Virus record (IMG/VR): IMGVR_UViG_3300044644_001125 | Coordinates: 124,001 to 188,000 of that record | Direction: 5' to 3' (one strand) | DNA length: 64,000 bases | In this document: in pieces, positions 7,088 to 41,859 of the stretch | Numbering within the stretch: the first letter of the stretch is position 1 | How the letters are laid out: each line of letters starts with the position of its first letter | The notes under the pieces: generated by a model | Told to the model about the DNA's origin: nothing | The model's database searches: none | What the model saw: the letters and a program-made list of their open reading frames with translations, nothing else | Translations under genes and position numbers: made by a program

Positions 7088-7381
7088 CTAGTATATATCT
7101 CGCACTGGTACAATACTATAATGCAATTTTAATTTCTCGCCATCACCCAGTTCCAGGTATCCAGATCTTATGTCAACTATACCAGTATCACAGATGTACC
7201 AAAAGTCTAAGTATGCAAACGTCGAAACTCCATGGACTTTTCCACGTATCGAAAATAATTCCGCATAAGTAGGAAATCTCCAGCCTACTTGATCGTTTAT
7301 AACAAGTGAGAAACAATACAACTTTGCTTCATTTATGGTCAAATCTTTCCAGTATTCGATTGGTGCTATTTGTATAGTCAT
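7088..7381 (-). CDS. mini DUF1566/Lcl-like family protein (dispersed copy)
   Basis: IAP.EY..EAKLYCFSL..GWRFPT..VPVRD. Confidence 0.75.
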   Translation of the reverse strand: MTIQIAPIEYWKDLTINEAKLYCFSLVINDQVGWRFPTYAELFSIRGKVHGVSTFAYLDFWYICDTGIVDIRSGYLELGDGEKLKLHYSIVPVRDIY

Positions 7382-7693
7382 TGTTTGTAATTATAACTTA
7401 AAGATAATTGATGTCAAGTTCATGATTGATTGCGAGGCCTGATAGGGCCGAGCCTAATGTTAATGCGTTATTTGCTCTTCTTGATTAATGTAATTACTTG
7501 CGAGGCCTGATAGGGCCGAGCCTTGCTGTATTTTGCGAGGCCTGATAGGGCCGAGCCTTTGTTTAGGTAGATTCTATTATCTTTTAGAAAGGTTGTCAAG
7601 AGGTTTTCTTAGTGGAAGGATAAATAAGGGTGTAACTCGCGGATGGCCGTCCCAGTTACTCTAATGCTTTCAATCTTACAGGAGAACATCAGC

Positions 7694-20394: not shown

Positions 20395-20787
20395 TTAAGA
20401 TTTCTTTGAGTAAACTGAGTTTAATATTTTGCATAATAGTTTCCTTGTTGTTGAGTATTTACCGATATCACGAACTGGTCTGACCGGATAGACCCGATCA
20501 GGTTTCCATCCTAGTTCAGCATTAGAGTAATGCATTATTATCACATTCCCGTAAAACAAACCAGCTGCGCCAATTTCTTCGAAGGTAGGCAATCTCCAAC
20601 CTGTTTTACCATCGATGTTCAACGAAAAACAATACATGATTGCTTCATCATGAGTAACTTGGATTTGATATTCGAGTGGTGCTACTTCAAAATCCAGTAA
20701 CAGGAAATCAAGATGATAGCCTGTAAACCACCATCGGTTATCAAAATCTTGTAATCGTTTTAAATACTTGTTCATGGTTAGTTCCAT
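20395..20787 (-). CDS. mini DUF1566/Lcl-like family protein with N-terminal extension
   Basis: FEVAP.EY..MYCFSLNIDGKTGWRLPT..RPVRD. Confidence 0.7.
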   Translation of the reverse strand: MELTMNKYLKRLQDFDNRWWFTGYHLDFLLLDFEVAPLEYQIQVTHDEAIMYCFSLNIDGKTGWRLPTFEEIGAAGLFYGNVIIMHYSNAELGWKPDRVYPVRPVRDIGKYSTTRKLLCKILNSVYSKKS

Positions 20788-22631: not shown

Positions 22632-22868
22632 CTAGGTACCCATTTCTCTTACTGGCCAACACAGCCTATTAAACGCATCGTGATCAGATTCGCAGTAAGC
22701 TAAACACCACATACTATCATTAGTTTGCTTATACAACTCACCTAACTCAACAATCGTTGGTAACCGCCAACCAGTCTTACCATCAATATTCAAAGAAAAA
22801 CAATAGAGTTTAGCATCACTGTACGACATTACCTGTTGATATTCAGTTGGCGTGGGTTCTAGTTTCAT
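22632..22868 (-). CDS. mini DUF1566/Lcl-like family protein
   Basis: DAKLYCFSLNIDGKTGWRLPT..WPVR. Confidence 0.75.
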   Translation of the reverse strand: MKLEPTPTEYQQVMSYSDAKLYCFSLNIDGKTGWRLPTIVELGELYKQTNDSMWCLAYCESDHDAFNRLCWPVREMGT

Positions 22869-24889: not shown

Positions 24890-25186
24890 TCAATTATCTT
24901 TTAGATCTCGTATGGCTCTGACGTGGTTGACGCTGTTCTTACCGTCGATGCCCCGGCCGTAATCCTGACCCATATGACCCCAGACGTAACTGCCATCGTA
25001 CTCGGTAGAGGTCCAGTACCAACGTTTTTCAAAATCATTTTCTGAATAATATATTTCATTCAATTCTTCCTTATTAGGCAACCGCCATCCAGTCTTACCA
25101 TCGATATTAAGAGAGAAGCAATATAATCTGGCATCATTCCAATTGAGTTTCGTTTCAGTAGATTTCGGTGCTATTTCAAAGTTCAT
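24890..25186 (-). CDS. DUF1566/Lcl-like protein with DGR-like variable region
   Basis: WNDARLYC..GWRLP..EL..YWTSTE..W..K..VRAIR; GC-rich, NNC-codon-rich 3' end. Confidence 0.8.
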   Translation of the reverse strand: MNFEIAPKSTETKLNWNDARLYCFSLNIDGKTGWRLPNKEELNEIYYSENDFEKRWYWTSTEYDGSYVWGHMGQDYGRGIDGKNSVNHVRAIRDLKDN

Positions 25187-27179: not shown

Positions 27180-27428
27180 TCAATTATCTTTTAGATCTCG
27201 AATAGGTCTAACAAAAAGTCTGCCATAACTCGCCTCATCATCGTCTGCTGTCCAATGATACCAAGTGGTTGCATACTCATTTTCTGATTCGTAAATCTCG
27301 TTTAGTTCTTCTCCTGTAGGTAATCTCCATCCAACTTTACCATCTATATTAAGAGAAAAGCAATACATCCTAGCTTCACCCAAAGTGGCTTCTATCTCTG
27401 TTGATTTTGGTGCTATTTCAAAGTACAT
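27180..27428 (-). CDS. mini DUF1566/Lcl-like family protein
   Basis: FEIAPKSTE..MYCFSLNIDGKVGWRLPT..RPIRDLKDN. Confidence 0.75.
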   Translation of the reverse strand: MYFEIAPKSTEIEATLGEARMYCFSLNIDGKVGWRLPTGEELNEIYESENEYATTWYHWTADDDEASYGRLFVRPIRDLKDN

Positions 27429-27730
27429 ACATCCCTCACAGGATAAGCCCAAACCGAATCACCATCGGTTTTGTAATACGTCAACGTCTCAAAATCAGTT
27501 AAATCAACTTGAGTCGCCTGATCATCGTCGGTACATTCAATAGTCCACACCCAAACTGATGGGTCATTAAAGTCTAAGTAAAACGTATCACGAATGCCTA
27601 TCAGTTCGTCAATTGTTGGTAATCTCCATCCAACCTTACCATCTATATTAAGACTAAAACAATACATCTTTGCTTCATCCCACGTCAACTCGTATTTTCG
27701 ATATTCTTCTGGTGCTATTTCAATACTCAT
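27413..27730 (-). CDS. mini DUF1566/Lcl-like family protein
   Basis: IEIAPEEY..WDEAKMYC..GWRLPTIDEL..YPVRD. Confidence 0.75.
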   Translation of the reverse strand: MSIEIAPEEYRKYELTWDEAKMYCFSLNIDGKVGWRLPTIDELIGIRDTFYLDFNDPSVWVWTIECTDDDQATQVDLTDFETLTYYKTDGDSVWAYPVRDVCTLK

Positions 27731-28023
27731 TGTAAACCCCTCACTGCAATTACTCGACCGTATACAGATTCTTTGTTACGAATGTCGTCTCTACCGAACA
27801 TCATATGTTTAATCCAAACCGCAGTAGTATTGTACTCGTATACAGCGGAAGACCAATACCAATGATCTTTATATGTATACCCACCTAAATGATATATCTC
27901 GGTTAACTCGGATAAGGTTGGTAATCTCCATCCAGTTTTACCGTTGATCTTAAGTGAAAAGCAATACAAACGAGCATCATCCCAGCTAGCTATTAGTTGC
28001 GTTGGTTCTATTTCAAATTTCAT
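27727..28023 (-). CDS. DUF1566/Lcl-like family protein
   Basis: WDDARLYC..GWRLPT..EL..YWSS..VIAVR. Confidence 0.8.
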   Translation of the reverse strand: MKFEIEPTQLIASWDDARLYCFSLKINGKTGWRLPTLSELTEIYHLGGYTYKDHWYWSSAVYEYNTTAVWIKHMMFGRDDIRNKESVYGRVIAVRGLQ

Positions 28024-28223
28024 TTCATATTCCTACTTGTTTAATTTCGGCCTATTATATAGCATGGTATTAAAATGTCAACCCTCAGTTTACTCCTTAT
28101 TATATAGATACATTACACCGTAGCGAGGAACGAAGTGACGAGCCATTAACCACTTGACAACCCAATCAATCAAATCTATAATATCAACCACTAAATATAC
28201 CAATACCCCAAAGGAGTTACCCA

Positions 28224-29170: not shown

Positions 29171-30094
29171 ATGAATATTATCAACGAAATGCTATTTGGC
29201 TCACATCTATACGGATTGGATACTCCAAATTCCGACAAAGACTATAAGGGTATTGTTTTACCAAGTAAAAATCAATTACTACTTGGTAAGACAAGTTTCC
29301 ATGTAGATCACTCCACAAACAACAACGCAAGTAGAAATACAAAAGACGACGTAGATAAAACCTACTACTCACTTCAGTATTTCGTAGACCTAGCTTGCCA
29401 AGGTGAAACCGTTGCACTAGATATGCTACACGCAACAGATGACAAAGTTATCGTTAACTCTGATATTTGGAAATTTCTTGTTGATAACAGACATCGTTTC
29501 TACACCAAAAGCATGAAAGCATATATCGGATATGTTAGAAAACAAGCAGCCAAGTACGGTGCAAAAGGTAGCAGACTAGCAGAAATCGAACGAGTCCTAA
29601 ACATCGCTAATGCGGCAAACGACAACCAAACTGTTGGTGAATTAACCGTCACAGAAAGCGATGTGGTCAAATGGGTAGTGTACAAAGACAACTATTACTT
29701 AGAAGTCTGTGGTAGTAAGTATCAAGACAATCTAAAAATCCCATTCCTAAAACGAGACTTACAAAAACATTTTGATAAGTATGGTGAACGTACCAAGTTA
29801 GCCAAACTCAATGAAGGTATCGATTGGAAAGCCCTCTCGCACGCATTACGCGCGGGTTACCAAGCACGTGATATTTTCACAAAAGGTTACTTTGAATATC
29901 CATTGGCAGAATCCTCAATCCTAATGGACGTAAAACAAGGTAAATTGGACTTTAATGTGGTTGAACCTCTACTGTCAAATCTAGTAGACGAAGTAACCAT
30001 TCTGGCAAACCAATCCAACTACCCAGACAAAGTCGATAGAGAATTCTGGGATGATTTCATCATCGAAAGCCATTTGCAAATTTTCGATAAGTAA
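29171..30094 (+). CDS. Pol-beta nucleotidyltransferase (RlaP / Nuc-transf-like)
   Basis: FGSHLYG..SDKDYKG (GS..DxD), DWKALSHA.R. Confidence 0.85.
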   Translation: MNIINEMLFGSHLYGLDTPNSDKDYKGIVLPSKNQLLLGKTSFHVDHSTNNNASRNTKDDVDKTYYSLQYFVDLACQGETVALDMLHATDDKVIVNSDIWKFLVDNRHRFYTKSMKAYIGYVRKQAAKYGAKGSRLAEIERVLNIANAANDNQTVGELTVTESDVVKWVVYKDNYYLEVCGSKYQDNLKIPFLKRDLQKHFDKYGERTKLAKLNEGIDWKALSHALRAGYQARDIFTKGYFEYPLAESSILMDVKQGKLDFNVVEPLLSNLVDEVTILANQSNYPDKVDREFWDDFIIESHLQIFDK

Positions 30095-30119
30095 TCGAAT
30101 TGAACCTAATAGGAAATCT

Positions 30120-30395
30120 ATGAACTTTGAAATAGCACCAGTTTTCATCAAAGCAACTTGGGACGAAGCCCGAATGTATTGTTTTGCTCTTAATGTCAAT
30201 GGTAAGACCGGTTGGAGATTACCTACGATAGCTGAACTACATGAGATGCTAAGTCGAGGATTAATCGAACCCGGAAATTACTGGTCGTCTGAAGTTACTA
30301 CCAACAACCACATCAAGTATTTGTCACCAGTCAGTGTTAGGTTCGGCGTAAATGAATACCAATTAGGCGTTTATCCAGTTCGTGATTTAGATTAA
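30120..30395 (+). CDS. mini DUF1566/Lcl-like family protein
   Basis: FEIAP..WDEARMYC..GWRLPT..YWSS..YPVRD. Confidence 0.75.
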   Translation: MNFEIAPVFIKATWDEARMYCFALNVNGKTGWRLPTIAELHEMLSRGLIEPGNYWSSEVTTNNHIKYLSPVSVRFGVNEYQLGVYPVRDLD

Positions 30396-31340: not shown

Positions 31341-32819
31341 CTATTTCTTACTAGGCTTTTTGTTCAACTTCTTTTCGAGTTTCTTGGCTTCCTTCGCTAT
31401 TCGTTTTTCTTCTTTAACTATAGCAGTCCAATCATTTTCCCACATAACAACCAAGTTGTATCCAAAATCAATTATCTCTTGGTCCATTCTACAAGAATGT
31501 TCGTACAATTCACCAAATGTTTTTCCATGTTTTATACTAAAAGATGATGGATCAAATACTGATGGGTTTCCATGATAATAATCGCCGTGAAATTGATATA
31601 TTGTATTCGTTTCAATGCAATACCCATCAACTGGTCTTGTTCGTTTCTCCGGTAATCTAAATTCTCTAACCAGTTCAAGTCCTAAACTATCCAACCATGC
31701 GTTAGCAGGTTTAGAACCATTAACACAACTATTCTTTACCTTTGGATTTTCTTTCTCGCATTCAGGGCATCCATACTTGTAGTGTTTACCAACTAGTATA
31801 GAAAAATCACCATGCACTGGGCAGGTAACTATAATAGGTACATTTTTAATATCACCACATAGTTCCACCTTCGAATAATCATATTTGAAATCATGAATCA
31901 AATTTAACTTTTCCACCAATTCTGGAACCTTTAAACTAACACGCTCACCCATCTCACGTCTGCTACAGGTATTACAACCCCAGCCGGTTAGATGTGATCT
32001 CGGGGATATTTCAAAATCACCATGCTCTTTGCAGGTAACAATTATTGTCGTTCCACGCGATTTTACATATACAGTTTTATCATATTCGTACCGGAAATCA
32101 TGTTTCTCATTCGCCTTGGCTACATATTCCTCAGTTGTTGTACGTCTATGTGGTCTTTCAACACCTTTAGTTTGTTCAGATATTGAATCTTTACCACATT
32201 TCGCACATCCATAGTAGGTGTGAGCATGTGCGGTTTGTGTGAATATCCCATGTTTTTCACATTCGATATTTATTTTCGTAGTACTATCGACATAATAGCT
32301 TTCAATATCTGGGTATGTATACTTTCCTTCGTGCTTTTCTTCGAATCTAACAAGCATTTCATCTAATGGTACTTTGCGACGTTCACTGCATTTCTCGCCT
32401 TTGCATTTTCCACACCCATGTTTATTAATATGGTCTGAAGGTTTTTGTAAAAAAGGCCCATGAACTAAGCAGTGTATCTCCACCTTCTTGTGCATGTGTT
32501 CATATTTCACCTGCGAGTAGTCAAATTTAGGATTTTCTATATTATCATGTGCTTCATTGAACTTTTCAATGACGTCTTCTTGGGACATTCTACTGTTTTT
32601 ACTATGCGCATCATTAGCACACTGCTTGCACCCATACATAGAGCGAACATGATCATACAATCTCTGTTCAAATAAACCATGAACTGGGCAATGTATCAAT
32701 ACCAGGCTATCTTTCCCAATATATTCGACACTTGAGTAATCGAATTTTCCATTGAACTTATTAGTTGCTTCTGCTATCATTCTTGCGGCGTAAGATTCGC
32801 CTCTGCTAAATACTGTCAT
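31341..32819 (-). CDS. homing-type endonuclease: five C..HG.F..C..C zinc repeats plus Vsr/PD-(D/E)xK-like domain
   Basis: YDYS.V.Y..I.C.VHG.F..GC..C repeats; VDGY..QFHGDYYHG..WEND. Confidence 0.75.
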   Translation of the reverse strand: MTVFSRGESYAARMIAEATNKFNGKFDYSSVEYIGKDSLVLIHCPVHGLFEQRLYDHVRSMYGCKQCANDAHSKNSRMSQEDVIEKFNEAHDNIENPKFDYSQVKYEHMHKKVEIHCLVHGPFLQKPSDHINKHGCGKCKGEKCSERRKVPLDEMLVRFEEKHEGKYTYPDIESYYVDSTTKINIECEKHGIFTQTAHAHTYYGCAKCGKDSISEQTKGVERPHRRTTTEEYVAKANEKHDFRYEYDKTVYVKSRGTTIIVTCKEHGDFEISPRSHLTGWGCNTCSRREMGERVSLKVPELVEKLNLIHDFKYDYSKVELCGDIKNVPIIVTCPVHGDFSILVGKHYKYGCPECEKENPKVKNSCVNGSKPANAWLDSLGLELVREFRLPEKRTRPVDGYCIETNTIYQFHGDYYHGNPSVFDPSSFSIKHGKTFGELYEHSCRMDQEIIDFGYNLVVMWENDWTAIVKEEKRIAKEAKKLEKKLNKKPSKK

Positions 32820-33288
32820 ATTGATGTCTCCTCTATAGACGTTGATTAGTAGTTCAAGATATTTCCCGATATCTTTTACTATGAGTATTTATCTTTTTGA
32901 ATCTAAAAGATAATGAAACCCAAGGAACCCGACTTAGATCGGGTTTCTTTTTGTCTAAAAGATAATGCCTTAAGGCTCGCACCTAGCGGTGCTCGCACCT
33001 CACAAATCCACCCACAATAGCTCCTCACAATATCCACCGTATACTTACATTGGCTCGCACCTAGCGGTGCTCGCGACCTCACAAATCCACCCACAATAGC
33101 TCGTCGCTAACGCTCCTCGCATCACTAAAATAAAATCCAACCTATCGGCACTCGCATCACTAAAATACAAACCAGCAACCTCACAAATCTAACCCACATC
33201 AAACCAACACCAAAAATACAAACAAATCCACTTGACATTCAACAAATCTCTAAGTACAATACGTAAAAAATACATTATAGGAACAAGC

Positions 33289-33561
33289 ATGGCAATTGAA
33301 ATAGCACCTGAAGAATACTGGAAAAAACTCGAATTTAATGATGCTAGGTTATATTTGTTTTCGTTGGTAATAGATAATCATGCAAATTGGCGATTTCCCA
33401 CACAAGATGAATGGCTTCACGAGATATACGACTTTACATCAGAATATAAGCAATTCTTTTCTGATTTTTGGCTACTAGAAGACTTGGCTTGCGTTACACC
33501 AGACAAATTAAATGAGTGGAAAGATCCGCTGTTTATAACCATACCAGTAAGAGACTTATAA
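33289..33561 (+). CDS. array unit 1
   Basis: MAIEIAPEEY..WRFPT..IPVRD. Confidence 0.75.
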   Translation: MAIEIAPEEYWKKLEFNDARLYLFSLVIDNHANWRFPTQDEWLHEIYDFTSEYKQFFSDFWLLEDLACVTPDKLNEWKDPLFITIPVRDL

Positions 33562-33833
33562 TGGCAAGACTAGACATAAAATTTGAACTCGCACCAGAGA
33601 AATACTGGAATTGTATGACGCATGAGGAAATCCGACTCTACTTGTTCTCATTGAATATTGATGGTACAACAGACTGGCGAGTACCCACTAACTACGAAAT
33701 TCTACAATTAAAAGGCATATGTTGGCAATCCGGTGAACTTGTTTGGTATAATGAAGCTGTTCTATATTTTAACAACCATCCAAGTAACGTCAGTGCATAC
33801 TACAAGTTAATTCCAGTGAGAGATAAAAGATGA
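33561..33833 (+). CDS. array unit 2
   Basis: FELAPEKY..DWRVPT..IPVRD; TAATG overlap. Confidence 0.75.
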   Translation: MARLDIKFELAPEKYWNCMTHEEIRLYLFSLNIDGTTDWRVPTNYEILQLKGICWQSGELVWYNEAVLYFNNHPSNVSAYYKLIPVRDKR

Positions 33834-34141
33834 TTGAAATAGCACCCAAAGAATATGAAATCCGATCAAGCTGGGACGATGCCCGTTTGTATTGTTTTGC
33901 TCTTCGCATAGATGGTAAAACTGGTTGGAGGTTGCCAACTGTTAAGGAGTTGAATAGTATCTGGGCTATGCCCGGCTGCGATTTTGCTAGATGGTATTAC
34001 TGGTCATCTGAAGAAGGTGACATTGGGTATGCTATTGATGTAGATTTTAATCGACAAGGTATAGATTATAAGTCATCGCCTGAGAATAAGGGATATGATG
34101 ATAACTTAGTTAGACCAGTAAGAGATCTAAAAGATGATTGA
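33830..34141 (+). CDS. array unit 3
   Basis: MIEIAP..GWRLPT..YWSS..RPVRDLKDD. Confidence 0.8.
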   Translation: MIEIAPKEYEIRSSWDDARLYCFALRIDGKTGWRLPTVKELNSIWAMPGCDFARWYYWSSEEGDIGYAIDVDFNRQGIDYKSSPENKGYDDNLVRPVRDLKDD

Positions 34142-34340
34142 GATAGGTGAAACAACAGATGCAAGATTGACCTACGCAGAAGCAGTGATGTATTGTTTTT
34201 GTTTAGGTGATGGTTGGAGATTGCCGACACGTCACGAATATTTCAATACAGACGAGGCAATGGCGTTTTCATGGTATAACGGTAAACAAAGCACGAGTCT
34301 GCGGCCAGTTACTCCAGTACGAGATCTAAAAGATGATTGA
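34134..34340 (+). CDS. array unit 4
   Basis: YCFCLGDGWRLPT..PVRDLKDD. Confidence 0.75.
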   Translation: MIEIGETTDARLTYAEAVMYCFCLGDGWRLPTRHEYFNTDEAMAFSWYNGKQSTSLRPVTPVRDLKDD

Positions 34341-34557
34341 AACAGAAATTGAAGTAGGTAAACCTGCAAAACCCATGACATATGATGAAGCGGTATTCTA
34401 TTGTTTTTGTTTAGGTGATGGTTGGAGATTGCCAACTGGCGAAGAATATATGCGTTTAAATCTGCAAATGTGTTGGTGGGAAGGTCAACGTTCATTAGGT
34501 GAAAGTTCATTAGGTGAATGGTTAGTTGTTCCAGTGCGAGATCTAAAAGATGATTGA
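34333..34557 (+). CDS. array unit 5
   Basis: YCFCLGDGWRLPT..PVRDLKDD. Confidence 0.75.
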   Translation: MIETEIEVGKPAKPMTYDEAVFYCFCLGDGWRLPTGEEYMRLNLQMCWWEGQRSLGESSLGEWLVVPVRDLKDD

Positions 34558-34765
34558 AACCAAATTTGAAATAGGTGTAAGATCAACAACAAAGATGACC
34601 TATGACGACGCAGTGATGTATTGTTTCTGTTTGGGTGATGGCTGGAGATTACCTACTATTGAAGAATTCGACGGCAATGTAAACTTCGTTTGGAACTTTA
34701 ATGACCAAACTAACCGTAATAACCGTTGGCATGTAATCCCAGTACGAGACTTACAAGATGATTGA
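34550..34765 (+). CDS. array unit 6
   Basis: YCFCLGDGWRLPT..PVRDLQDD. Confidence 0.75.
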   Translation: MIETKFEIGVRSTTKMTYDDAVMYCFCLGDGWRLPTIEEFDGNVNFVWNFNDQTNRNNRWHVIPVRDLQDD

Positions 34766-35015
34766 AATAGCACCTGAAGAATATTGGGTTGAATGTACGT
34801 GGCAAGAAATCAAACTGTACTTGTTTGTATTGACTATTGATGGTAAGCAGGATTGGAGATTACCAACCGAAGAGGAACAAGAGGATTGGTTTGTTAGCAT
34901 ACCGAATATCAAGGCTGAACGATGGACAATTACGGATACTTTGGATGAAGAATGGTATTCTCGAGTTGGATCCAAGTTTTTGTTAATCCCAGTACGAGAT
35001 CTAAAAGATGATTGA
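34758..35015 (+). CDS. array unit 7
   Basis: IDGKQDWRLPT..PVRDLKDD. Confidence 0.75.
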   Translation: MIEIAPEEYWVECTWQEIKLYLFVLTIDGKQDWRLPTEEEQEDWFVSIPNIKAERWTITDTLDEEWYSRVGSKFLLIPVRDLKDD

Positions 35016-35268
35016 GATAGCACCGGAAGAGTATTGGAAAAAATCGACCATCCACAATATCGATTTGTACTTGTTTGTTTTGACGATTGATGGTAAGATT
35101 GGCTGGAGATTGCCTACCAGCGACGAATGGATTTATTACGTGTATGATGCAAGTGACCCAAACCATTGGATGGGTAATTATTGGTTTTCAGATGAACTTG
35201 GTTATATTGAGGATCAGGGAGAACCTGAACTTGATATTATACCAGTAAGAGATCTAAAAGATGATTGA
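35008..35268 (+). CDS. array unit 8
   Basis: IDGKIGWRLPT..PVRDLKDD. Confidence 0.75.
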   Translation: MIEIAPEEYWKKSTIHNIDLYLFVLTIDGKIGWRLPTSDEWIYYVYDASDPNHWMGNYWFSDELGYIEDQGEPELDIIPVRDLKDD

Positions 35269-35473
35269 GATAGGTGAAACTACAAATTCAAGAATGACCT
35301 ACGCCGATGCCGTATTTTACTGTTTTTGTCTAGGTGGCGACTGGAGATTACCAACTGAAGGGGAATCCGCGCGTTATATACCAGGTCACATTGGTTGGTT
35401 AAAAGACGACTTCCTGCGCCATGGTGTTAGTCTTTGGCCCGTAACTCCAGTGCGAGATCTAAAAGATGATTGA
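35261..35473 (+). CDS. array unit 9
   Basis: YCFCLGGDWRLPT..PVRDLKDD. Confidence 0.75.
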   Translation: MIEIGETTNSRMTYADAVFYCFCLGGDWRLPTEGESARYIPGHIGWLKDDFLRHGVSLWPVTPVRDLKDD

Positions 35474-35717
35474 ACCCAAACTCGAAGTAGCACCTGAAGA
35501 GTACTGGATAGAAACCGAGGTGACTAATCTTATATTTTATCTTATGTTATTGGACATTGATGGTAACCGGGATTGGCGGGTCCCAACACTTGACGAAACT
35601 CGAGTTGTAAGAGTTCATGGCATTCGTGGGATGTGGAATTCTAATGATACGGTTGATAACATTTCCCACAAAATTAAATATTGGTTAATCCCAGTACGAG
35701 ATCTAAAAGATGATTGA
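35466..35717 (+). CDS. array unit 10
   Basis: IDGNRDWRVPT..PVRDLKDD. Confidence 0.75.
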   Translation: MIEPKLEVAPEEYWIETEVTNLIFYLMLLDIDGNRDWRVPTLDETRVVRVHGIRGMWNSNDTVDNISHKIKYWLIPVRDLKDD

Positions 35718-35949
35718 AGTAGCACAGAAAAACCAATGGCTCTCAGTTAGTCAAGCCGATGCTAAACTTCGGATGTTTGTTCTGGGTGATGGTTGGAGGT
35801 TTCCGACCTTCGTGGAAACCCACAGTCTGCAATTTCCAATGATGGTTTCACCAGTTTGGAATACAGATACTATTAATAACCCTGAGTTAGATAAGCATCA
35901 TGATGTTCGACGGGTGTTTATCCCAGTACGAGATCTAAAAGATGATTGA
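35710..35949 (+). CDS. array unit 11
   Basis: LGDGWRFPT..PVRDLKDD. Confidence 0.75.
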   Translation: MIEVAQKNQWLSVSQADAKLRMFVLGDGWRFPTFVETHSLQFPMMVSPVWNTDTINNPELDKHHDVRRVFIPVRDLKDD

Positions 35950-36181
35950 AGTAGCACAGAAAAAGCAATGGATTCCCCTTGTACGAGACGATGTTAAACT
36001 TCGTGTGTTTTTACTAGGTGATGGGTGGAGATTACCAACCTTTGACGAAACTCGACTGCTGCAATTTCCAACGATGACCACACCTTACTGGTATGCGGAT
36101 ATCATTAATAATCCAGAGTTAGATAAGGGTCGTAGCAATCGTCGATTACTTATCCCAGTACGAGATCTAAAAGATGATTGA
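35942..36181 (+). CDS. array unit 12 (close paralog of unit 11)
   Basis: MIEVAQK..LQFP..INNPELDK shared with unit 11. Confidence 0.75.
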   Translation: MIEVAQKKQWIPLVRDDVKLRVFLLGDGWRLPTFDETRLLQFPTMTTPYWYADIINNPELDKGRSNRRLLIPVRDLKDD

Positions 36182-36407
36182 AATAGCACCTGTTGAATAT
36201 CACAAAAAATTAACGTATACGGATGCCAAGTTATATTGTTTTTCTTTGAATATAGATGGTAAGGTTGGTTGGAGATTACCAACACAGAAAGAATTTTTCA
36301 ATAACCGAAACATATATGGTTGGTATGCTGATGGTGTAGGTGAACGAAGTGATCGATTAACTAATCTTGGAACTATTATCCCAGTACGAGATCTAAAAGA
36401 TGATTGA
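36174..36407 (+). CDS. array unit 13
   Basis: YCFSLNIDGKVGWRLPT..PVRDLKDD. Confidence 0.75.
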   Translation: MIEIAPVEYHKKLTYTDAKLYCFSLNIDGKVGWRLPTQKEFFNNRNIYGWYADGVGERSDRLTNLGTIIPVRDLKDD

Positions 36408-36609
36408 AATAGGTCCTAGAACAAATACTCCATTATCCAAAGAGGATGCGGAATTTTACTGTTTTTGCCTTGGTGACGGTTGGCGATTAGCAACAGCGGA
36501 TGAGTTTTACTCGATGCTTGGTAGTATTATTGGTTGTTACGATTCTTTTAGTGACCCAAATACCGTAAAATTATTCTTCACACCAGTACGAGATCTAAAA
36601 GATGATTGA
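36400..36609 (+). CDS. array unit 14
   Basis: YCFCLGDGWRLAT..PVRDLKDD. Confidence 0.75.
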   Translation: MIEIGPRTNTPLSKEDAEFYCFCLGDGWRLATADEFYSMLGSIIGCYDSFSDPNTVKLFFTPVRDLKDD

Positions 36610-36811
36610 GATAGGTGAACAATCAGAATTTAAAATGACCTACGACGAAGCAGTTATGTATTGTTTTTGTTTAGGTGATGGTTGGCGATTACCAAGTCAA
36701 GAAGAATACCACAAATACATCCCACCCTATTTTGGTGTAACTTGGTATCAAGAACATGGTTTGTGGTTTAATTTACCAGTAATCCCAGTGCGAGATATAA
36801 TCGATGATTGA
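36602..36811 (+). CDS. array unit 15
   Basis: YCFCLGDGWRLPS..PVRDIIDD. Confidence 0.75.
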   Translation: MIEIGEQSEFKMTYDEAVMYCFCLGDGWRLPSQEEYHKYIPPYFGVTWYQEHGLWFNLPVIPVRDIIDD

Positions 36812-37040
36812 GCAAGCACCCAAAGAATACGAAAAAGAGTTGACGTGGAATGCAGCAATCTTCTACTGTTTCTCACTTAATATTGAAGGTGATGTTGGTT
36901 GGAGATTACCGACTTATGAAGAAATACGTACTATCGTTGGTTACACGAATACGTGGAAATATTGGTACGGTGAAGTCAGAGATGACAGTGAGACTAAAAG
37001 ATATCGAGTAATCCCAGTGCGAGATCTAAAAGATGATTGA
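36804..37040 (+). CDS. array unit 16
   Basis: YCFSLNIEGDVGWRLPT..PVRDLKDD. Confidence 0.75.
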   Translation: MIEQAPKEYEKELTWNAAIFYCFSLNIEGDVGWRLPTYEEIRTIVGYTNTWKYWYGEVRDDSETKRYRVIPVRDLKDD

Positions 37041-37248
37041 AATCGGAAAAGCATCAGAATTTGGCATAAGTTATGACGAGGCAGTTTTGTATTGTTTTTG
37101 TTTGGGTGATGGTTGGAGGTTACCAACACAAGCGGAATACTACGCTAATCAGGAATCAGTTGGTGCATGCTGGTATCAAGGCGACCCGGCAAGCCATTTG
37201 GGTAAACTGTGGCCAGTAGTCCCAGTGCGAGATATAAAAGCGGATTGA
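37033..37248 (+). CDS. array unit 17
   Basis: YCFCLGDGWRLPT..PVRDIKAD. Confidence 0.75.
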   Translation: MIEIGKASEFGISYDEAVLYCFCLGDGWRLPTQAEYYANQESVGACWYQGDPASHLGKLWPVVPVRDIKAD

Positions 37249-37445
37249 ATCAATCGCGAGTGTCACCTAAATATCGGTATGAAATTCTTAATTTACGTCG
37301 CACTCACTTACGGTTTAGCATGGATATTAACCACGGTTATTGATCAAATCCAGCACTACAACATTCCTACCAAACACTGGTATGAGTTTGGTTACCTATT
37401 ATCTATTATTGTATTCACACACATAATTGCTTACTTTGTACGAAA

Positions 37446-38231
37446 ATGACTAGAATATACTACGCATCAGATTTACATTTAGAACATCGCCAATTGGATT
37501 ACGGGATTATACATCCGATTCCAAATAGCATTTTAGTATTAGCTGGTGATATTGTTCCTACTGCGAGTCTAATATTCCAACAGAATCACCCAGATCCTAC
37601 TAGTACTGATTTTGTTGACTTTTTTGAGATTATTTCGTTTAAGTACAAACATGTCATTTATGTTGCTGGGAATCATTCATTATATGGATCCCAATATAAC
37701 AGCATTGGTAACTTAAAACGCGCATTGGCTGAGTATACCAATATCCATGTTTTAGATTGCGAATCGATTACCTTAGAAGGTATTGATTTTTACGGTGGTA
37801 CGTGCTGGACTGACTTCAACCGAGAAGATCCACAAACCATGATGTTAGCACCAAGAACGTTAATGGACTTTCGTGTTATTAAAGAAGGCACTGGTAAGTT
37901 CTTACCTAGCACTGCGTTAGAATTACACAAACAATACTTGGTTGGATTAGACAAGTTCTTAAATACTACTAAGAACAAGACAGTTGTTGTGAGTCATCAT
38001 TCTCCATCACATGCGACTATTAATCCAATCTACAAAGACCAATACCACATGAATGGATTGTTCTCGTCGGATTTGACCGAATACATGGAAGGGATTGATT
38101 ATTTCATCTATGGTCACATGCATTCAGGCTTAGACGTGGTACATGGTGACTGCCACGTTATTACAAACCCTCGTGGGTATCCTCACGAACCAAGTCACCG
38201 CAATTTTCAAATGAGGTATTTTGACTTATGA
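37446..38231 (+). CDS. calcineurin-like metallophosphoesterase
   Basis: SDLH, LAGDI, GNH, HH.P, GHMH, NPRGY. Confidence 0.9.
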   Translation: MTRIYYASDLHLEHRQLDYGIIHPIPNSILVLAGDIVPTASLIFQQNHPDPTSTDFVDFFEIISFKYKHVIYVAGNHSLYGSQYNSIGNLKRALAEYTNIHVLDCESITLEGIDFYGGTCWTDFNREDPQTMMLAPRTLMDFRVIKEGTGKFLPSTALELHKQYLVGLDKFLNTTKNKTVVVSHHSPSHATINPIYKDQYHMNGLFSSDLTEYMEGIDYFIYGHMHSGLDVVHGDCHVITNPRGYPHEPSHRNFQMRYFDL

Positions 38232-39030: not shown

Positions 39031-39145
39031 TTAGTTACTCTCTTGTTAGTATCCGGTATTTATGGCTCGCACCTAGCGGTGCTCGCTACCAAACAAAATC
39101 CAATTAAACCTTGACATCCCTTATCTTTTAGCTATAATACGACCC

Positions 39146-39466
39146 ATGATTGAATTTGCCCCAGACGAATATTGTACATACTTAAATTGGTACGATGCCA
39201 AGGTCTACTGTTTTGCTTTGACGATTGATGGTAAGACTGGTTGGCGATTACCTACGTTTGAAGAATTTGCAGAATGGAATGCCAGTTCTGAGTATGCTGG
39301 CGTTCGTGAGTTTGATATCGCGTTACCTGTACATTTCTGTTGGACTTCAACAGAAAATGAAGATCAACAAGATACCGTGTGGGTTCACTGTGATCAAGGT
39401 ATTATCTACAGCACAGAGGGCAAGGAATATCGCAGATTAACAAAACCGTGTAGAACATTCTCTTGA
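39146..39466 (+). CDS. mini DUF1566/Lcl-like family protein
   Basis: WYDAKVYC..GWRLPT..CWTSTE; own sigma70 promoter at 39111. Confidence 0.75.
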   Translation: MIEFAPDEYCTYLNWYDAKVYCFALTIDGKTGWRLPTFEEFAEWNASSEYAGVREFDIALPVHFCWTSTENEDQQDTVWVHCDQGIIYSTEGKEYRRLTKPCRTFS

Positions 39467-40957
39467 CATCCGGTAAATATAGGGTATACTACTTCACATG
39501 TCAACCAAGGAGACCAAATGTCGCAGCTACTCGATCGATTTACTAACTTTTTCAAGAAACAACCACCAGTTGAAATGACTGAACAGGAACGCATGATGTA
39601 CTACATTGAGCAAACCATTCAAAAAAGTAAACTTGAGGCTAAAGAGCATTGCACTGTTTGTATTTTTCAAACTCCTCGTGAAACACCAACCGGTGCTACT
39701 TTAGAATTGTTTCGACCAGAGTTAGTTATCCCAGATGATGCAATTTACATCGAGGATAGATTGATTAAGTTGGGACATTATTGTTCTACCAAGTACAACA
39801 GAAATTCAATAACCGTCTTTGTCTATTTTGACGAGGATCATTTTAACTTTTAAACAGGAGATACGATGGATGATTACTGGTCATACATTGGAGTTGGTGT
39901 AAGTTGTTTTGTATTAGGGTGGGTAATATCACATTGGTATTGCATTCGAACCTTTGGTGATATCTTAGAATACTTTGGTATTACGGTGGATGACTTGGAG
40001 AACATGAAAATCGAAGAGTTGTTAGCCAAGAATGAAGACGAACCAGATGAAACCGAAGTAGCTATTACTGTTGAGACAGTTAACGGCCAACTATATGCTT
40101 ACACTAAAGAAAACCCAAGATTCCTTGCACAAGGCCGTAACCGCGAAGAATTGATTAATGCGTTAGGTGAGAAATTATCTGATGTAACCATCCTTATCTC
40201 TGAAGGAGATGAAGGTTTCGAATTAATGACTACCGAGAACTAAACTATGAATACTAACTTTATTGACGACATTGAACCAAAAACTGAAGAACAACGTTTA
40301 CGTAACATATTACTAGGCATTGCTACTTTGAATGCTGCTGATTATTGTACTGGTACTGAATTACAATGGGCTGAAGCTGCCCTGTTTAGAAAGGTTCGCC
40401 AAGTTGCTCACGAGGCATTGATGGAAGAACCAATTTGTTAATAGTTTATTTCCAATTTGGAAACAATTATTGCTACTTTTAAGCAATAAATACTATATTA
40501 CAACCCACAAGGAAACAATCATGAAAACATCGAACAAAAATCGATCAACTACTGCCCCTTACCTTTGGGGTCCTGGCGAAACAACCGTAGAACCACCTTC
40601 TGCGCATACTGTGGTAGAAAACCCATGGGTTTTACTATTCTCAACTGGTTTTGCTCTTTGGGTATTATCGGGGTTGATAGCATGAAAGAACATGGCACTA
40701 AACAAATCAATGCGTTAATGCACGACTTATCCATTGTTGCAACTGTGTTTTTAGTTGGAGCTACTACATTAATCCTGACATCATTAGGCTAAAAATGTCA
40801 CAAACTCAATTTGATATTATTGAAGATCAAGCTGAACAAATCAAACGTTACAAGGAAGTTGTATTTGGATTGTCAGTGGTGGTTGGAGTACAAACCACTT
40901 TGATACTAGGTGGTGCTCTACTCACCTACTATGCATATTACTATCTTTCTTGAAATC

Positions 40958-40984
40958 AAGGGCTACTACGGTAGCCCTTTTTTG
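40958..40984 (+). terminator. intrinsic terminator
   Basis: AAGGGCTAC-TACG-GTAGCCCTT stem-loop plus T-run. Confidence 0.8.
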
Positions 40985-41269
40985 TGTCTAAAAGATAATT
41001 GAAAATAATGGTTGACATTAGTATTCATTAGCGTTACAATTAACCATAGATTGAAATTACCCAAAAGCAGTGAACGAGATACCTTGAAAAATAGGTTGAC
41101 AATCCCCATTATAAAGTCTATACTTAATCATATTCTAGCTAAAAGCAGTTACACTAAAGTAGTTTACAGAGACCAACTCAATTATTATCGACACCCAGTC
41201 TATTAATTCTATTATCTTTTAGAGACCATCTCAAATCATATCGACACCAAGTCTATTATCTTTTAGGCA

Positions 41270-41745
41270 CCCGCCAACCCTTGCTCACCGAATTACTAGA
41301 ACTAACTTAGAAAGGTGAGAGAACTGTCAAGAAAGCCGTGCACAGGCGACCATAACGTGCCCTTAAACCCTAGTCTAATTGAATCATAGGGGATGGAAGT
41401 TCCGAAGTTGACAGCGGAGATATAACACACTACCCCGCCAGATGAGTTATGGGATACGCCTTCGTACAACCCATTTGTGTTATAGCGAAATTAGTAAAAA
41501 AGGCTAAAGATGGGTTGAGAAAACCCACGTCATATGAATGAGGTAGCAGTTGTTCATATGGCCACCGTCAGATTAATAAGACTGAGCTCGAGGTACCGGC
41601 TGACCGCCTCTGTAATTGCTCTACTGCTGCTGTGATGCGATACTTGTATGCAGAACAACTTTGGCTATGTTTATATAATGTAGCCAAAACAACTTAGAAG
41701 TCACCCGAGTTTTTCGGGTTAAGATGTTCAGCTCCTCATACTGCA
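41270..41745 (+). ncRNA. large structured non-coding RNA candidate (class unknown)
   Basis: no ORF; more than 10 nested helices; G-U wobbles favour + strand; two sigma70 promoters at ~41032 and ~41096. Confidence 0.6.
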
Positions 41746-41859
41746 GTATTAAAAGCCTCTATAATAGATCTATTAATGATTCTATTATAAATCTATAATT
41801 GTAGGAGCGTATAAGATAATTCTAAAAGATAATAGATCCATTACTTCCTACCTGCTTAA

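What the first reader, a model, noticed from the sequence alone, without database searches (positions are those of the whole stretch)
33289..37248. 17-unit cassette array of hypervariable mini C-type-lectin-fold (DUF1566-like) genes with a DNA-conserved junction
Seen: 17 head-to-tail genes of 68-103 aa behind one sigma70 promoter. Each unit runs: junction CCAGTRMGAGATCTAAAAGATGATTGA (core exact at 12 junctions, giving an 8-nt ATGATTGA stop/start overlap), variable segment 1, conserved core (YC..GWRLPT, often TATTGTTTTTGTTTAGGTGATGGTTGG), variable segment 2, next junction. Junctions are near-identical even at synonymous sites while the variable segments are essentially unalignable. Two subtypes (LGDGW and IDGK.GW) are interleaved. 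Nine more copies are dispersed (7088, 20395, 22632, 24890, 27180, 27413, 27727, 30120, 39146). Known: WRLPT..EL..W..VR is the DUF1566/Lcl signature, a CLec fold used for ligand display in DGR targets. Inference: a phage-encoded repertoire of small cytoplasmic binders (no signal peptides; possibly anti-defence decoys or inhibitors) diversified by recombination through the junction and core repeats.
Basis: partly seen in the sequence, partly recalled or inferred. Interest (0 to 1): 0.9.

Follow-up and report, generated by a model that had tools for sequence, protein, structure and literature searches.

The report
Jumbo-phage array of mini lectin-fold genes
A 327-kb lake-water phage carries 17 back-to-back genes (and at least 80 genome-wide) for tiny, very different versions of one lectin-like binding domain, which looks like an inherited repertoire of small binders reshuffled by recombination; what they bind is unknown.

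Summary
Window 33289-37248 (+) holds 17 intact head-to-tail ORFs of 68-103 aa behind a sigma70-type promoter that is invariant in five related phages. Fourteen junctions have the 8-nt ATGATTGA stop/start overlap.

The units belong to the Lcl_C/DUF1566 C-type-lectin-like family. The short ones are truncated to about 70 aa yet model confidently (pLDDT 95).

The window is part of a 327,256-bp lake-water phage contig. That contig carries at least 80 family members in the half I could read.

Syntenic arrays in related phages have 8 to 26 units, in collinear order, with whole-unit gains and losses and clean chimeras. So recombination-driven birth-and-death is shown.

Each unit is under purifying selection between phages (dN/dS 0.08-0.40). 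Paralogue differences are old. There is no DGR-type hypermutation.

The junction's synonymous-site conservation is real: it uses rare codons (CGA, CTA). It is largely explained by three things: a Shine-Dalgarno sequence (GAGAT), the start/stop overlap, and a 12-nt motif (CTAAAAGATRAT). That motif is the most over-represented word of the whole early region (46 copies against 0.02 expected).

Function as cytoplasmic binders or counter-defence proteins is inferred, not tested.

The parts
32903..32966 (+). Two direct copies of the 12-mer CTAAAAGATAAT (32903-32914 and 32955-32966) flanking a bidirectional terminator-like hairpin (32922-32949). This marks the upstream boundary of the transcription unit.
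   Evidence: The same pair is present upstream of the arrays in L001, L004, L005 and L006.
33232..33260 (+). Sigma70-type promoter TTGACA-17-TACAAT of the array.
   Evidence: 11 of 12 consensus matches. -35 and -10 are invariant in five phages, including the distant L002. It is one of 9 strict consensus sites in the window against 0.37 expected.
33289..33561 (+). Unit 1, 90 aa, IDGK-type. Conserved anchor unit.
   Evidence: Orthologues are 90-99% identical in L001, L004 and L005.
33561..33833 (+). Unit 2, 90 aa, IDGK-type. Anchor unit.
33830..34141 (+). Unit 3, 103 aa, near full-size Lcl_C domain. Anchor unit.
   Evidence: Pfam Lcl_C 40.6 bits against a cut-off of 34.9. AF2 pLDDT 79.9; best PDB match is the Legionella Lcl C-terminal domain 8q4e, E 1.1e-3, TM 0.66.
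34134..34340 (+). Unit 4, 68 aa, LGDGW-type. Its 5' half recurs with three different 3' halves in relatives.
34333..34557 (+). Unit 5, 74 aa, LGDGW-type.
34550..34765 (+). Unit 6, 71 aa, LGDGW-type. Its variable segment 2 is shared with units of the other core subtype in L001, L004 and L005 (mosaic).
34758..35015 (+). Unit 7, 85 aa, IDGK-type. The 5' half is 98% identical to L001 unit 14, but the 3' half only 70%.
35008..35268 (+). Unit 8, 86 aa, IDGK-type.
35261..35473 (+). Unit 9, 70 aa, LGDGW-type.
35466..35717 (+). Unit 10, 83 aa, IDGK-type.
35710..35949 (+). Unit 11, 79 aa, LGDGW-type. Tandem duplicate partner of unit 12.
   Evidence: TRF period 232, 78% matches.
35942..36181 (+). Unit 12, 79 aa, LGDGW-type.
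36174..36407 (+). Unit 13, 77 aa, IDGK-type.
36400..36609 (+). Unit 14, 69 aa, LGDGW-type. Absent, together with unit 15, from a natural variant.
   Evidence: A contig in lake sample X4 joins 36392 to 36804. Units 13 and 16 are adjacent in L004 and L005.
36602..36811 (+). Unit 15, 69 aa, LGDGW-type. Junction variant (DIIDD).
36804..37040 (+). Unit 16, 78 aa, IDGK-type.
   Evidence: Pfam Lcl_C 32.5 bits, E 1.2e-7.
37033..37248 (+). Unit 17, 71 aa, LGDGW-type. Last unit.
   Evidence: AF2 pLDDT 95.1, pTM 0.82. Foldseek top hits are all of the C-type-lectin-like superfamily: poxvirus A33/A35 TM 0.69, Link module, phage DUF1566 probability 1.0.
34115..34141 (+). Representative junction, CCAGTRMGAGATCTAAAAGATGATTGA, repeated at the end of units 3-16. 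It combines four elements: the codons of the last beta-strand (PVRD); the Shine-Dalgarno-like GAGAT of the next unit; the 12-mer CTAAAAGATGAT (which translates as LKDD); and the ATG/TGA overlap.
37279..38231 (+). Genes that continue the same + strand unit: a 56-aa hydrophobic ORF (37279-37449) and a metallophosphoesterase (37446-38231). No terminator-like site was found between them and the array.
   Evidence: The synteny is kept in L001, L002, L004 and L005.
7088..7381 (-). Dispersed family copy, 97 aa, directly behind a consensus promoter (7417..7390).
20395..20787 (-). Dispersed family copy. The domain occupies residues 33-108 of the ORF.
22632..22868 (-). Dispersed family copy, 78 aa.
24890..25186 (-). 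Dispersed full-size copy, 98 aa. It ends in the consensus motif (DLKDN, stop).
27180..28023 (-). Cluster of three family copies (27727-28023, 27413-27730, 27180-27452) behind the promoter at 28081..28054.
30051..30395 (+). Dispersed family copy. The probable start is internal, near 30120.
39146..39466 (+). Dispersed family copy, 106 aa. Its ATG lies 7 nt after the -10 box of the promoter at 39111..39138.

Best explanation
The array is a translationally coupled operon that probably belongs to the early genes of a freshwater jumbo phage. It encodes 17 separate, soluble, mostly acidic single-domain proteins.

Shown:
- Each protein is a cut-down C-type-lectin-like domain of the Lcl_C/DUF1566 family.
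- The conserved residues (N-terminal strand MIEI, helix ..A.LYCF.L, the W-R-L-P-T..E core, a Trp, and the C-terminal strand PVRD) make up the fold. The segment between WRLPT..E and PVRD differs completely from unit to unit.
- The array is the largest cluster of a family of at least 80 genes in this genome.
- It evolves by birth and death. Whole units are gained and lost. Halves of units are re-joined by unequal or illegitimate recombination, within the conserved junction, within the conserved core and occasionally elsewhere.
- Each resulting unit is then kept by purifying selection.

Inferred for expression: one host-RNA-polymerase promoter drives all units. Each unit is translated from its own GAGAT Shine-Dalgarno sequence and from an ATG that overlaps the previous stop. 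This, together with a clade-wide 12-nt DNA motif lying in the same bases, fixes the junction sequence.

Inferred for function: the units act as an inherited repertoire of small binders with distinct specificities. They are made in the cytoplasm early in infection. They most plausibly bind and neutralise variable host proteins (host take-over, counter-defence, or immunity against toxins). This is the germline counterpart of what DGRs achieve by mutagenesis on the same fold.
For: Anatomy and expression signals. The promoter is invariant in five phages. Strict sigma70 consensus sites are enriched, 9 against 0.37 expected, and four sit directly upstream of family genes.

Separate proteins, not one polyprotein:
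- Other genes of this phage use GGAG/GAGA(T) Shine-Dalgarno sequences.
- Junction Arg codons are only CGA or AGA, which is what GAGAT requires.
- A TAA in the next unit's frame lies two codons before its ATG, which can be read directly from the junction sequence.

Family and fold:
- Pfam Lcl_C passes the cut-off for unit 3. 7 of 17 units match at E<=0.1.
- An HMM built only from short units finds full-size copies at E 3e-15.
- AF2 gives pLDDT 95.1 for the 71-aa unit and 79.9 for the 103-aa unit.
- Foldseek: Lcl C-terminal domain 8q4e at E 1.1e-3, TM 0.66; poxvirus A33/A35, Link module and C-type lectins at TM 0.54-0.69; a phage DUF1566 protein at probability 1.0.
- The invariant R and E, six residues apart, match the conserved salt bridge described for Lcl (PMC11162425).

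Expansion: at least 80 non-redundant members in 165.7 kb of the 327-kb contig.

Birth-and-death and shuffling:
- Arrays of 8 to 26 units lie at the same genomic place, with collinear orthologues.
- L004 unit 4 equals the first 38 nt of L005 unit 4 plus the rest of L005 unit 5, the latter at 100% identity.
- 9 of 35 multi-member V2 clusters are joined to two or more V1 clusters.
- A two-unit deletion is present in a lake sample.

Selection: dN/dS between orthologues is 0.21 (V1), 0.08 (core), 0.30 (V2) and 0.40 (junction).

Solubility: no hydrophobic N-terminus. Median pI is 4.7.

Fold as a variable binding scaffold: DUF1566-type domains are DGR targets diversified at the C-terminus (PMC5758913).
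Against: - There is no expression, localisation or binding data. No RNA run could be listed.
- The host is unknown. The only hint is a Polynucleobacter-1 RNA.
- Early timing rests only on promoter type and gene neighbourhood.
- Cellular relatives of the domain are extracytoplasmic lipoproteins and adhesins (PMC11162425). A carbohydrate or envelope ligand therefore cannot be excluded.
- Foldseek E-values for the short unit are weak (>0.5 against PDB). The fold assignment rests on consistent top hits and on sequence homology.
- No match to known defence or anti-defence models.
- Translational coupling is inferred from sequence only. The dip in local RNA folding at starts is modest.
Confidence: 0.6

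Rival explanations
1. The mini-lectins act outside the cytoplasm on glycans. They would be carried on the virion as accessory adhesins or decoration, or be released at lysis to bind host surface polysaccharide or debris. A repertoire would then match variable surface glycans and host range.
For: The domain family is an adhesin/lectin module in bacteria. Lcl binds glycosaminoglycans (PMC11162425). Bacterial relatives are lipoproteins with tandem domains. DGR targets with this fold are surface-exposed or tail-fibre proteins. Virion proteins need no signal peptide.
Against: The array and the dispersed copies sit behind sigma70-type promoters among nucleic-acid-metabolism and accessory genes, not in the tail-fibre block at 50-58 kb. 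No tail-fibre ORF in the window carries the domain. The units have no attachment domain. A count of 80 or more small virion proteins would be unusual.
Confidence: 0.15
2. The junction is a dedicated recombination signal. Units would be mobile cassettes excised and inserted at the 12-nt motif, either by a site-specific system or as mini-circles like those of PeSL elements in T4-type phages. The junction would be conserved for that reason.
For: The junction contains a motif that is massively over-represented genome-wide, 46 against 0.02 expected, mostly intergenic and in both orientations. Family genes elsewhere are often bounded by it. Whole-unit gains and losses have their ends in the junction. 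In T4-type phages, recombination between short regulatory cassettes shuffles genes and makes circles (PMC2839356).
Against: No integrase or recombinase lies next to any of the arrays (Pfam lists). The junction has no inverted-repeat structure beyond AGATCT. Its bases are already accounted for by Shine-Dalgarno sequence, overlap and coding. One clean crossover lies outside any motif. Block ends at junctions are expected from any homologous recombination between the longest shared repeats.
Confidence: 0.1
3. The expansion is largely neutral or selfish. Small genes would be amplified by slippage between repeats (a genomic accordion) without each copy having its own function.
For: Copy number is very labile between close relatives: 8 to 26 units, and one-unit differences between near-identical genomes. 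Fusions and chimeras are tolerated.
Against: All 17 frames are intact. Orthologous units are under purifying selection in every segment. Paralogues are old and distinct rather than recent identical copies. Order is conserved across phages.
Confidence: 0.08
4. The variable segment is diversified by a diversity-generating retroelement, or by another targeted hypermutation system acting on the lectin fold.
For: The fold and family are classic DGR targets, with the variable region at the C-terminus.
Against: No reverse transcriptase or template repeat was found within 10 kb of any array or among the larger ORFs of the window scanned with PHROGs or Pfam. V2 has dN/dS 0.30 between orthologues, with dS like the rest of the gene. 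Paralogue V2 differences are saturated at synonymous sites as well.
Confidence: 0.02

Closest known systems
Lcl_C / DUF1566 domain (Pfam PF07603); solved example: Legionella pneumophila Lcl C-terminal domain, PDB 8q4e
   Same: Sequence signature W-R-L-P-T..E...W...VR. The conserved Arg-Glu pair. A C-type-lectin-like fold without disulfides. Best structural match of unit 3.
   Different: Most units are 68-86 aa and lack the beta-sheet part of the 117-position model. They have no collagen stalk, no signal peptide and no other domain. They are phage-encoded. Trimer formation and glycan binding are untested.
DGR variable proteins with the C-type-lectin fold (category 'd', CLec2: DUF1566/DUF823/Fib_succ_major; PMC5758913)
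   Same: The same fold family is used as a scaffold in which the C-terminal part carries the diversity. Many such targets are short, single-domain proteins.
   Different: Here the diversity is stored as many germline paralogues and re-assorted by recombination. There is no reverse transcriptase, no template repeat and no adenine-directed mutagenesis. Each variant is evolutionarily stable.
Hyperplastic regions and PeSL regulatory cassettes of T4-type phages (PMC2839356, PMC4122927)
   Same: Small non-essential early genes behind strong sigma70-like promoters. Short conserved non-protein-driven sequences between genes. Gene gain, loss and replacement between close relatives by recombination at these sequences.
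   Different: PeSLs are promoter-plus-terminator units that flank unrelated genes. Here the repeat is a translational junction inside an operon of paralogues, and the 12-mer's own function is unknown. Mini-circles were not tested.
gp38 adhesins of T-even phages: hypervariable segments between conserved glycine-rich motifs (PMC3157838)
   Same: Conserved structural motifs alternate with interchangeable specificity segments. Modular exchange is thought to use the conserved motifs.
   Different: gp38 is a single tail-fibre-tip protein with a different fold. Here the modules are whole small genes and half-genes in arrays.
Polyimmunity loci (tandem arrays of paralogous SUKH or other immunity proteins, also in DNA viruses; PMC3113570) and poxvirus 'genomic accordions' (own knowledge)
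   Same: Tandem arrays of small diversified binders whose number changes quickly. They are interpreted as answers to diverse or changing antagonists.
   Different: Unrelated folds. No toxin or defence partner is known here. The analogy is functional and untested.

Membership tests
Pfam Lcl_C (PF07603, formerly DUF1566) | Score at or above the curated gathering cut-off (34.9 bits) | tested here: inconclusive
   Unit 3 passes (40.6 bits). Unit 16 scores 32.5 bits. 7 of 17 match at E<=0.1 and the rest score nothing. The short units are linked to full-size, Pfam-positive copies by an HMM of short units only (E down to 3e-15).
Pfam Lcl_C (PF07603, formerly DUF1566) | Conserved core residues: Trp-Arg...Glu, with the Arg and Glu that form the intra-domain salt bridge in Lcl | tested here: met
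   W, R and E (R+6) are invariant in all 17 units and nearly so in 120 relatives. The feature is described in PMC11162425.
Pfam Lcl_C (PF07603, formerly DUF1566) | C-type-lectin-like fold | tested here: met
   AF2 models have pLDDT 95.1 (71 aa) and 79.9 (103 aa). Unit 3 is best matched by Lcl-CTD 8q4e (E 1.1e-3, probability 1.0, TM 0.66). For the short unit, all top PDB and viral hits are C-type-lectin-like (TM 0.54-0.77), but with weak E-values.
Pfam Lcl_C (PF07603, formerly DUF1566) | Complete domain (about 95-117 positions, including the beta-strands after the second helix) | tested here: not met
   Fourteen units of 68-86 aa are clearly truncated. Where they match, they align only to model positions of about 19-64 plus the last strand. 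The DSSP of the 71-aa model shows two short strands and helices only. Unit 3 covers positions 22-117. The 90-aa units 1 and 2 are intermediate in length and their coverage was not examined.
DGR target (variable protein) | Nearby reverse transcriptase and a template repeat about 90% identical to the variable region | tested here: not met
   No RT family appears among the called genes within 10 kb of the arrays in five phages. Among the larger ORFs of the window, 20 were scanned (PHROGs or Pfam) without an RT hit. No near-copy of any V2 lies outside its unit. The rest of the 327-kb genome was not fully examined.
DGR target (variable protein) | Ongoing hypermutation of the variable region | tested here: not met
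   V2 dN/dS is 0.30 and dS 0.19, like the flanks, between orthologues.
PeSL-type mobile regulatory cassette (T4-type phages) | Cassette composed of a strong sigma70-like promoter plus a terminator stem-loop | tested here: not met
   The junction holds neither. Promoter, hairpin and motif do occur together at the array's upstream border and at other intergenic sites.
PeSL-type mobile regulatory cassette (T4-type phages) | Recombination between cassettes causes gene gain, loss and replacement between close relatives | tested here: met
   Unit indels have ends inside the junction. The resolution is limited to the length of the shared repeat.
PeSL-type mobile regulatory cassette (T4-type phages) | Excised mini-circles | not testable with these tools
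   Only assembler contigs of the lake runs were available.
Integron-like gene cassettes | Integrase next to the array, and attC-type imperfect inverted repeats at cassette boundaries | tested here: not met
   There is no recombinase in the neighbourhoods. The junction has only the 6-nt palindrome AGATCT and weak predicted structure.

The most novel reading that the evidence does not exclude
A jumbo phage keeps a germline library of 80 or more minimal lectin-fold binders. Each would neutralise a different host immune, toxin or take-over target. The phage would renew the library by cassette-like shuffling at a clade-wide 12-nt signal that doubles as the translational junction. This would be a recombination-based counterpart of DGR diversification, and a ready-made natural scaffold of about 70 aa for binder engineering.
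Probability: 0.15. Interest if true: 0.9.

Novelty: new variant of a known kind. Interest (0 to 1): 0.66.

Why it matters
Phages are known to diversify C-type-lectin-fold binders by retroelement mutagenesis. Here the same fold family is diversified in another way, as a very large inherited gene family re-assorted by recombination. Its units are cut down to about 70 residues, smaller than the compact lectin-like domains they resemble.

If the units are intracellular binders, the locus gives dozens of natural, individually conserved specificities to test against host defence or take-over targets. It also gives a very small stable scaffold.

It is also a clean natural example of how overlapping constraints can freeze a gene junction while the coding sequence on either side diverges beyond alignment. 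Those constraints are the ribosome-binding site, the start/stop overlap and a genome-wide DNA motif.

[quoted passage not shown] I found no paper describing such arrays.

Tried and rejected
- Near-identity DNA search of the array against GenBank phages found nothing. The ligase and phosphatase have only 30-35% relatives, so no cultured relative exists to lean on.
- A profile search of PDB sequences found nothing significant. Only fold comparison linked the units to solved structures.
- PADLOC found no hit for any unit. NCBIfam gave only sub-threshold adhesin hits.
- Polyprotein by frameshift or read-through is rejected. A TAA lies in the next frame two codons before each ATG, and each unit has its own Shine-Dalgarno sequence and ATG. 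Natural in-frame fusions do exist elsewhere (P0001).
- Tail-fibre 'silent cassette' donor is rejected. No tail-fibre ORF in the window carries the domain.
- Positive selection was not detected between orthologues or recent paralogues. Synonymous sites of V2 are saturated between paralogues.
- The 12-mer as a simple promoter or RNA signal is unlikely. Orientation relative to genes is mixed (19 of 34) and the distance to starts is not fixed.
- RNA accessibility of the junction is only a modest dip in local folding energy. The unpaired probability is no different from the surroundings.
- No metatranscriptome run was listed. Read-level population analysis was limited to assembler contigs, which break at every junction.
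- The search for related loci could not use the 17-unit alignment. Single units were used instead.
- The literature searches found no description of such arrays.

Full report
**1. The observation**

The region 33289-37248 contains 17 consecutive + strand ORFs of 68-103 aa. The 20-mer GAGATCTAAAAGATGATTGA is exact at 12 junctions and within three mismatches at four more. Shuffles give 0.01. From unit 3/4 to unit 16/17 (14 junctions) the next ATG lies 8 nt before the end of the previous TGA. Units 1/2 and 2/3 overlap by 1 and 4 nt.

A TTGACA-17-TACAAT site lies at 33232-33260. In an alignment with four related phages, its -35 and -10 boxes and the AGGA before the first ATG are invariant while the flanks diverge.

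A protein-guided codon alignment shows invariant E3, L, W, R, E, P, V, R and D. It also shows two interleaved core subtypes, LGDGW and IDGK.GW.

**2. The source**

The window is positions 124001-188000 of IMG/VR contig UViG_3300044644_001125 (327,256 bp). The sequence is held by many lake-water and freshwater metagenome runs.

The window encodes tail fibres, an ATP-dependent DNA ligase, a T4-type RNA ligase, ClpP, several HNH endonucleases and three TnpB-like ORFs. No cultured phage is close.

A Polynucleobacter-1 RNA (Rfam RF01718, 69.7 bits) at 41335-41485 is a hint to the host group.

**3. Family and fold**

- Sequence. Unit 3 passes the Pfam Lcl_C (ex-DUF1566) cut-off, and 7 of 17 units match at E<=0.1. 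The only other weak hits are to FGE-sulfatase and poxvirus A33R, both C-type-lectin-like families. An HMM built from 76 short-subtype sequences alone finds the full-size (about 96-105 aa) copies of the same genome at E down to 3e-15. The short units are therefore true, truncated members.
- 71-aa unit 17. AlphaFold2 with a 120-sequence alignment gives pLDDT 95.1 and pTM 0.82. All its top PDB hits are C-type-lectin-like: TSG-6 Link module, tunicate and mammalian C-type lectins, and poxvirus A33/A35 at TM 0.69. Their E-values are weak. In the viral library the best hit is a phage DUF1566 protein (probability 1.0).
- 103-aa unit 3. AlphaFold2 gives pLDDT 79.9. Its best PDB match is the Legionella Lcl C-terminal domain (8q4e, E 1.1e-3, TM 0.66).
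- Conserved pair. The invariant Arg and the Glu six residues later correspond to the conserved intra-domain salt bridge described for Lcl (PMC11162425).
- Cellular location. The units have no hydrophobic N-terminus: the maximum 12-residue hydropathy is <=1.68, against 3.07 for a bacterial lipoprotein relative. They are mostly acidic, with median pI 4.7.

**4. Size of the family**

In the 165.7 kb of the contig that I could fetch, the array profile finds 80 non-redundant ORFs. These parts were fetched by homology, so they are biased towards the family. The ORFs lie in clusters of 17 (this finding), 10, 8, 7, 5, 5 and 4, plus singles.

They fall into two classes:
- a fairly uniform full-size class, MNFEIAPKSTEI...YVRAIRSI;
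- the mini class with unalignable second halves.

A profile search of 5.8 billion clusters gave 813 small relatives. Among the 120 best listed, every hit with a recorded source comes from a metagenome collection. A search of 1.84 billion representatives gave 2719 hits. These include bacterial proteins with 2-16 tandem domains, one of them a lipoprotein. One representative genome of each of 185,579 cellular species holds no close relative.

**5. Comparison with related phages**

The same genomic slot, between ClpP (with or without a DUF723-HNH gene) and the metallophosphoesterase, holds arrays of different sizes:
- 26 units in L001;
- 13-14 units in L004;
- 14-15 units in L005;
- 8 units in the more distant L002.

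Orthologous units are 90-99% identical and collinear. Whole units are present or absent between them.

Chimeras are clear:
- L004 and L005 are near-identical through most of the array. L004 unit 4 equals the first 38 nt of L005 unit 4 followed by the rest of L005 unit 5, the latter at 100% identity. This is a one-unit deletion whose crossover lies in variable segment 1, at about 6 nt of shared sequence.
- Window unit 7 is 98% identical to L001 unit 14 in its 5' half and 70% in its 3' half. L004 carries both versions side by side.
- The 5' half of window unit 4 occurs with three different 3' halves.
- Among 179 distinct units, 9 of 35 multi-member V2 clusters are joined to two or more V1 clusters, and 14 V1 clusters to two or more V2 clusters.
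- A contig in lake sample X4 joins 36392 to 36804. It drops units 14 and 15, with both ends inside the junction.

Independent assemblies agree on unit order, so the array is not an assembly artefact.

**6. Selection**

Between orthologous units (27 pairs) dN/dS is 0.21 (V1), 0.08 (core), 0.30 (V2) and 0.40 (junction). dS is 0.19-0.35.

Between paralogues, and between the discordant halves of chimeras, synonymous sites of V2 are near saturation (pS 0.5-0.9).

The diversity is therefore old and maintained. It is re-assorted by recombination, not produced by ongoing hypermutation. No reverse transcriptase lies near any array.

**7. Why the junction is frozen**

- Arg is CGA (49) or AGA (7).
- Val is GTA or GTG, never GTT.
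- Leu/Ile is CTA, TTA or ATA.
- Lys is always AAA.

In the rest of the genome, CGA, CTA and GTA are minority codons. The WRLPT core of the same units uses codons in genomic proportions.

Three overlapping explanations fit the bases:
1. CGA/AGA followed by GAT spells GAGAT. Other genes of this phage have this sequence (as GGAGAT, GAGAT or GAGA) 6-10 nt before their ATG.
2. GATGATTGA is double-coding (DD-stop and MIE).
3. CTAAAAGATGAT is a copy of a 12-mer, CTAAAAGATRAT, that is not private to the array.

On point 3:
- The 12-mer occurs 46 times in the window against 0.02 expected, 34 of them outside the array.
- It is the top 10-mer even with the array masked.
- It occurs 135 times in the 165.7 kb of the contig read, and in 37 of the 38 related loci fetched by then.
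- All window copies lie in the accessory part (1-44 kb). Twenty-five of the 34 outside the array are intergenic.
- They occur in both orientations relative to genes (19 of 34 co-oriented). They are often inside the spacer of sigma70-type promoters, next to terminator hairpins, in tandem, or as inverted pairs.
- The C-terminal tail LKDD (LKDN in two dispersed copies) is simply this motif translated.
- The same junction is kept in the distant L002. Recent gene conversion alone therefore does not explain it.

I could not determine what the motif does. An orientation-independent protein-binding site (operator or architectural site) is the simplest reading. A role in recombination is possible.

**8. 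Mechanism**

Shown:
- the anatomy;
- family membership and fold;
- the expansion;
- unit turnover and chimeras;
- purifying selection;
- nucleotide-level constraint at the junction.

Inferred:
- Transcription from the single host-type promoter is early.
- Each unit is translated by coupling at its own ribosome site.
- The products are cytoplasmic single-domain binders whose variable half is the ligand surface. This follows from analogy with DGR targets of the same family, where the C-terminal part is varied (PMC5758913).
- Their targets are variable host factors.

The main rival is an extracellular or virion-associated glycan-binding role, suggested by what the domain does in bacteria.

**9. 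Comparison with what is known**

The domain family is known and is annotated in uncultured phages. Its function in phages is not known. The evolutionary mode resembles the hyperplastic regions and PeSL cassettes of T4-type phages (PMC2839356), the modular gp38 adhesins (PMC3157838), and polyimmunity arrays (PMC3113570).

Three things are new here:
- the scale: 17 in one operon, at least 80 per genome;
- the truncation of the fold to about 70 residues;
- the use of a paralogue library instead of a retroelement on this scaffold.

[quoted passage not shown] My literature searches found no description of such arrays.

**10. Verdict**

Fold, phage origin, absence of signal peptides and recombinational mosaicism are supported. 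A special recombination role for the junction is not needed, and the function is untested.
- Novelty: a new variant of a known kind.
- Interest: about 0.66.

Noticed in passing
window 1-44200, both strands (e.g. 10054-10165, 12006-12533, 32903/32955, 40988-42187): The 12-mer CTAAAAGATRAT is hugely over-represented: 46 copies against 0.02 expected, 34 of them outside the array. It is mostly intergenic and absent from the structural part (44-64 kb). It sits in the spacers of sigma70-like promoters, beside terminator hairpins, in tandem and as inverted pairs. It is present in 37 of the 38 related loci fetched by then. Its function is unknown.
   Followed up: partly
window 41335-41485 (+), inside the ORF-poor, repeat-rich stretch 40950-42430: Rfam Polynucleobacter-1 RNA (RF01718), 69.7 bits against a gathering score of 37. 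It lies in a 1.5-kb region with eight copies of the 12-mer and several other short direct repeats. This is a possible host hint (Polynucleobacter) and a possible regulatory or replication region.
   Followed up: no
source contig outside the window: about 116.8-119.3 kb, 224.4-226.3 kb, 230.3-232.4 kb, 236.7-240.4 kb, 308.6-309.5 kb, 324.2-326.6 kb (loci L013, L035, L015, L020, L030, L014): Further arrays of the same family: 4+5, 5, 8, 10, 3 and 7 genes. They bring the count to at least 80 in the half of the genome examined. The 10-gene array is made of uniform full-size copies (MNFEIAPKSTEI...).
   Followed up: partly
window 32973-33024 and 33052-33103; also near 24860 and 27150: A second intergenic repeat, GGCTCGCACCTAGCGGTGCTCGC-like (9 copies of its 10-mers in the window). 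It is present twice between the terminator hairpin and the array promoter.
   Followed up: no
window 31341-32819 (-): The DUF723/HNH endonuclease gene between ClpP and the array is present in L001, L004 and L005 but absent from L002. In L002 the array follows ClpP directly. It is probably a mobile homing-endonuclease insertion.
   Followed up: partly
window 39111-39146 (+) and 7417-7381 (-): Consensus promoters whose -10 box ends 7-8 nt before the ATG of a family gene, with no Shine-Dalgarno sequence. This suggests leaderless mRNAs for some dispersed copies.
   Followed up: no
window 47134-48213 (+): A 359-aa protein with an Mtd_N domain (N-terminus of the Bordetella-phage tropism determinant) followed by collagen repeats. 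Its C-terminal part does not match the array profile.
   Followed up: no
L008 6793-7254; proteins P0001, P0075, P0044: Natural derivatives of units in other samples. P0001 is an in-frame fusion of two units (153 aa). P0075 is a chimera joining the first part of a unit-14-type V2 to the tail of a unit-15-type V2. P0044 joins unit-3-type V1 to unit-16-type V2.
   Followed up: partly
window 36772-36801 (+): The variant junction of unit 15 (GATATAATCGATGA) creates a TATAAT box 17-18 nt after a TTTACC/TTACCA hexamer (10 of 12 matches). This is a possible weak internal promoter before unit 16.
   Followed up: no
window 12646-13929, 48502-49779, 58523-59791: Three ORFs match the PHROG transposase family phrog_506, which I take to be IS200/IS605 TnpB-like. 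Together with several HNH endonuclease genes (137-1444, 8806-10008, 31341-32819), they make an unusually high load of selfish elements for 64 kb.
   Followed up: no
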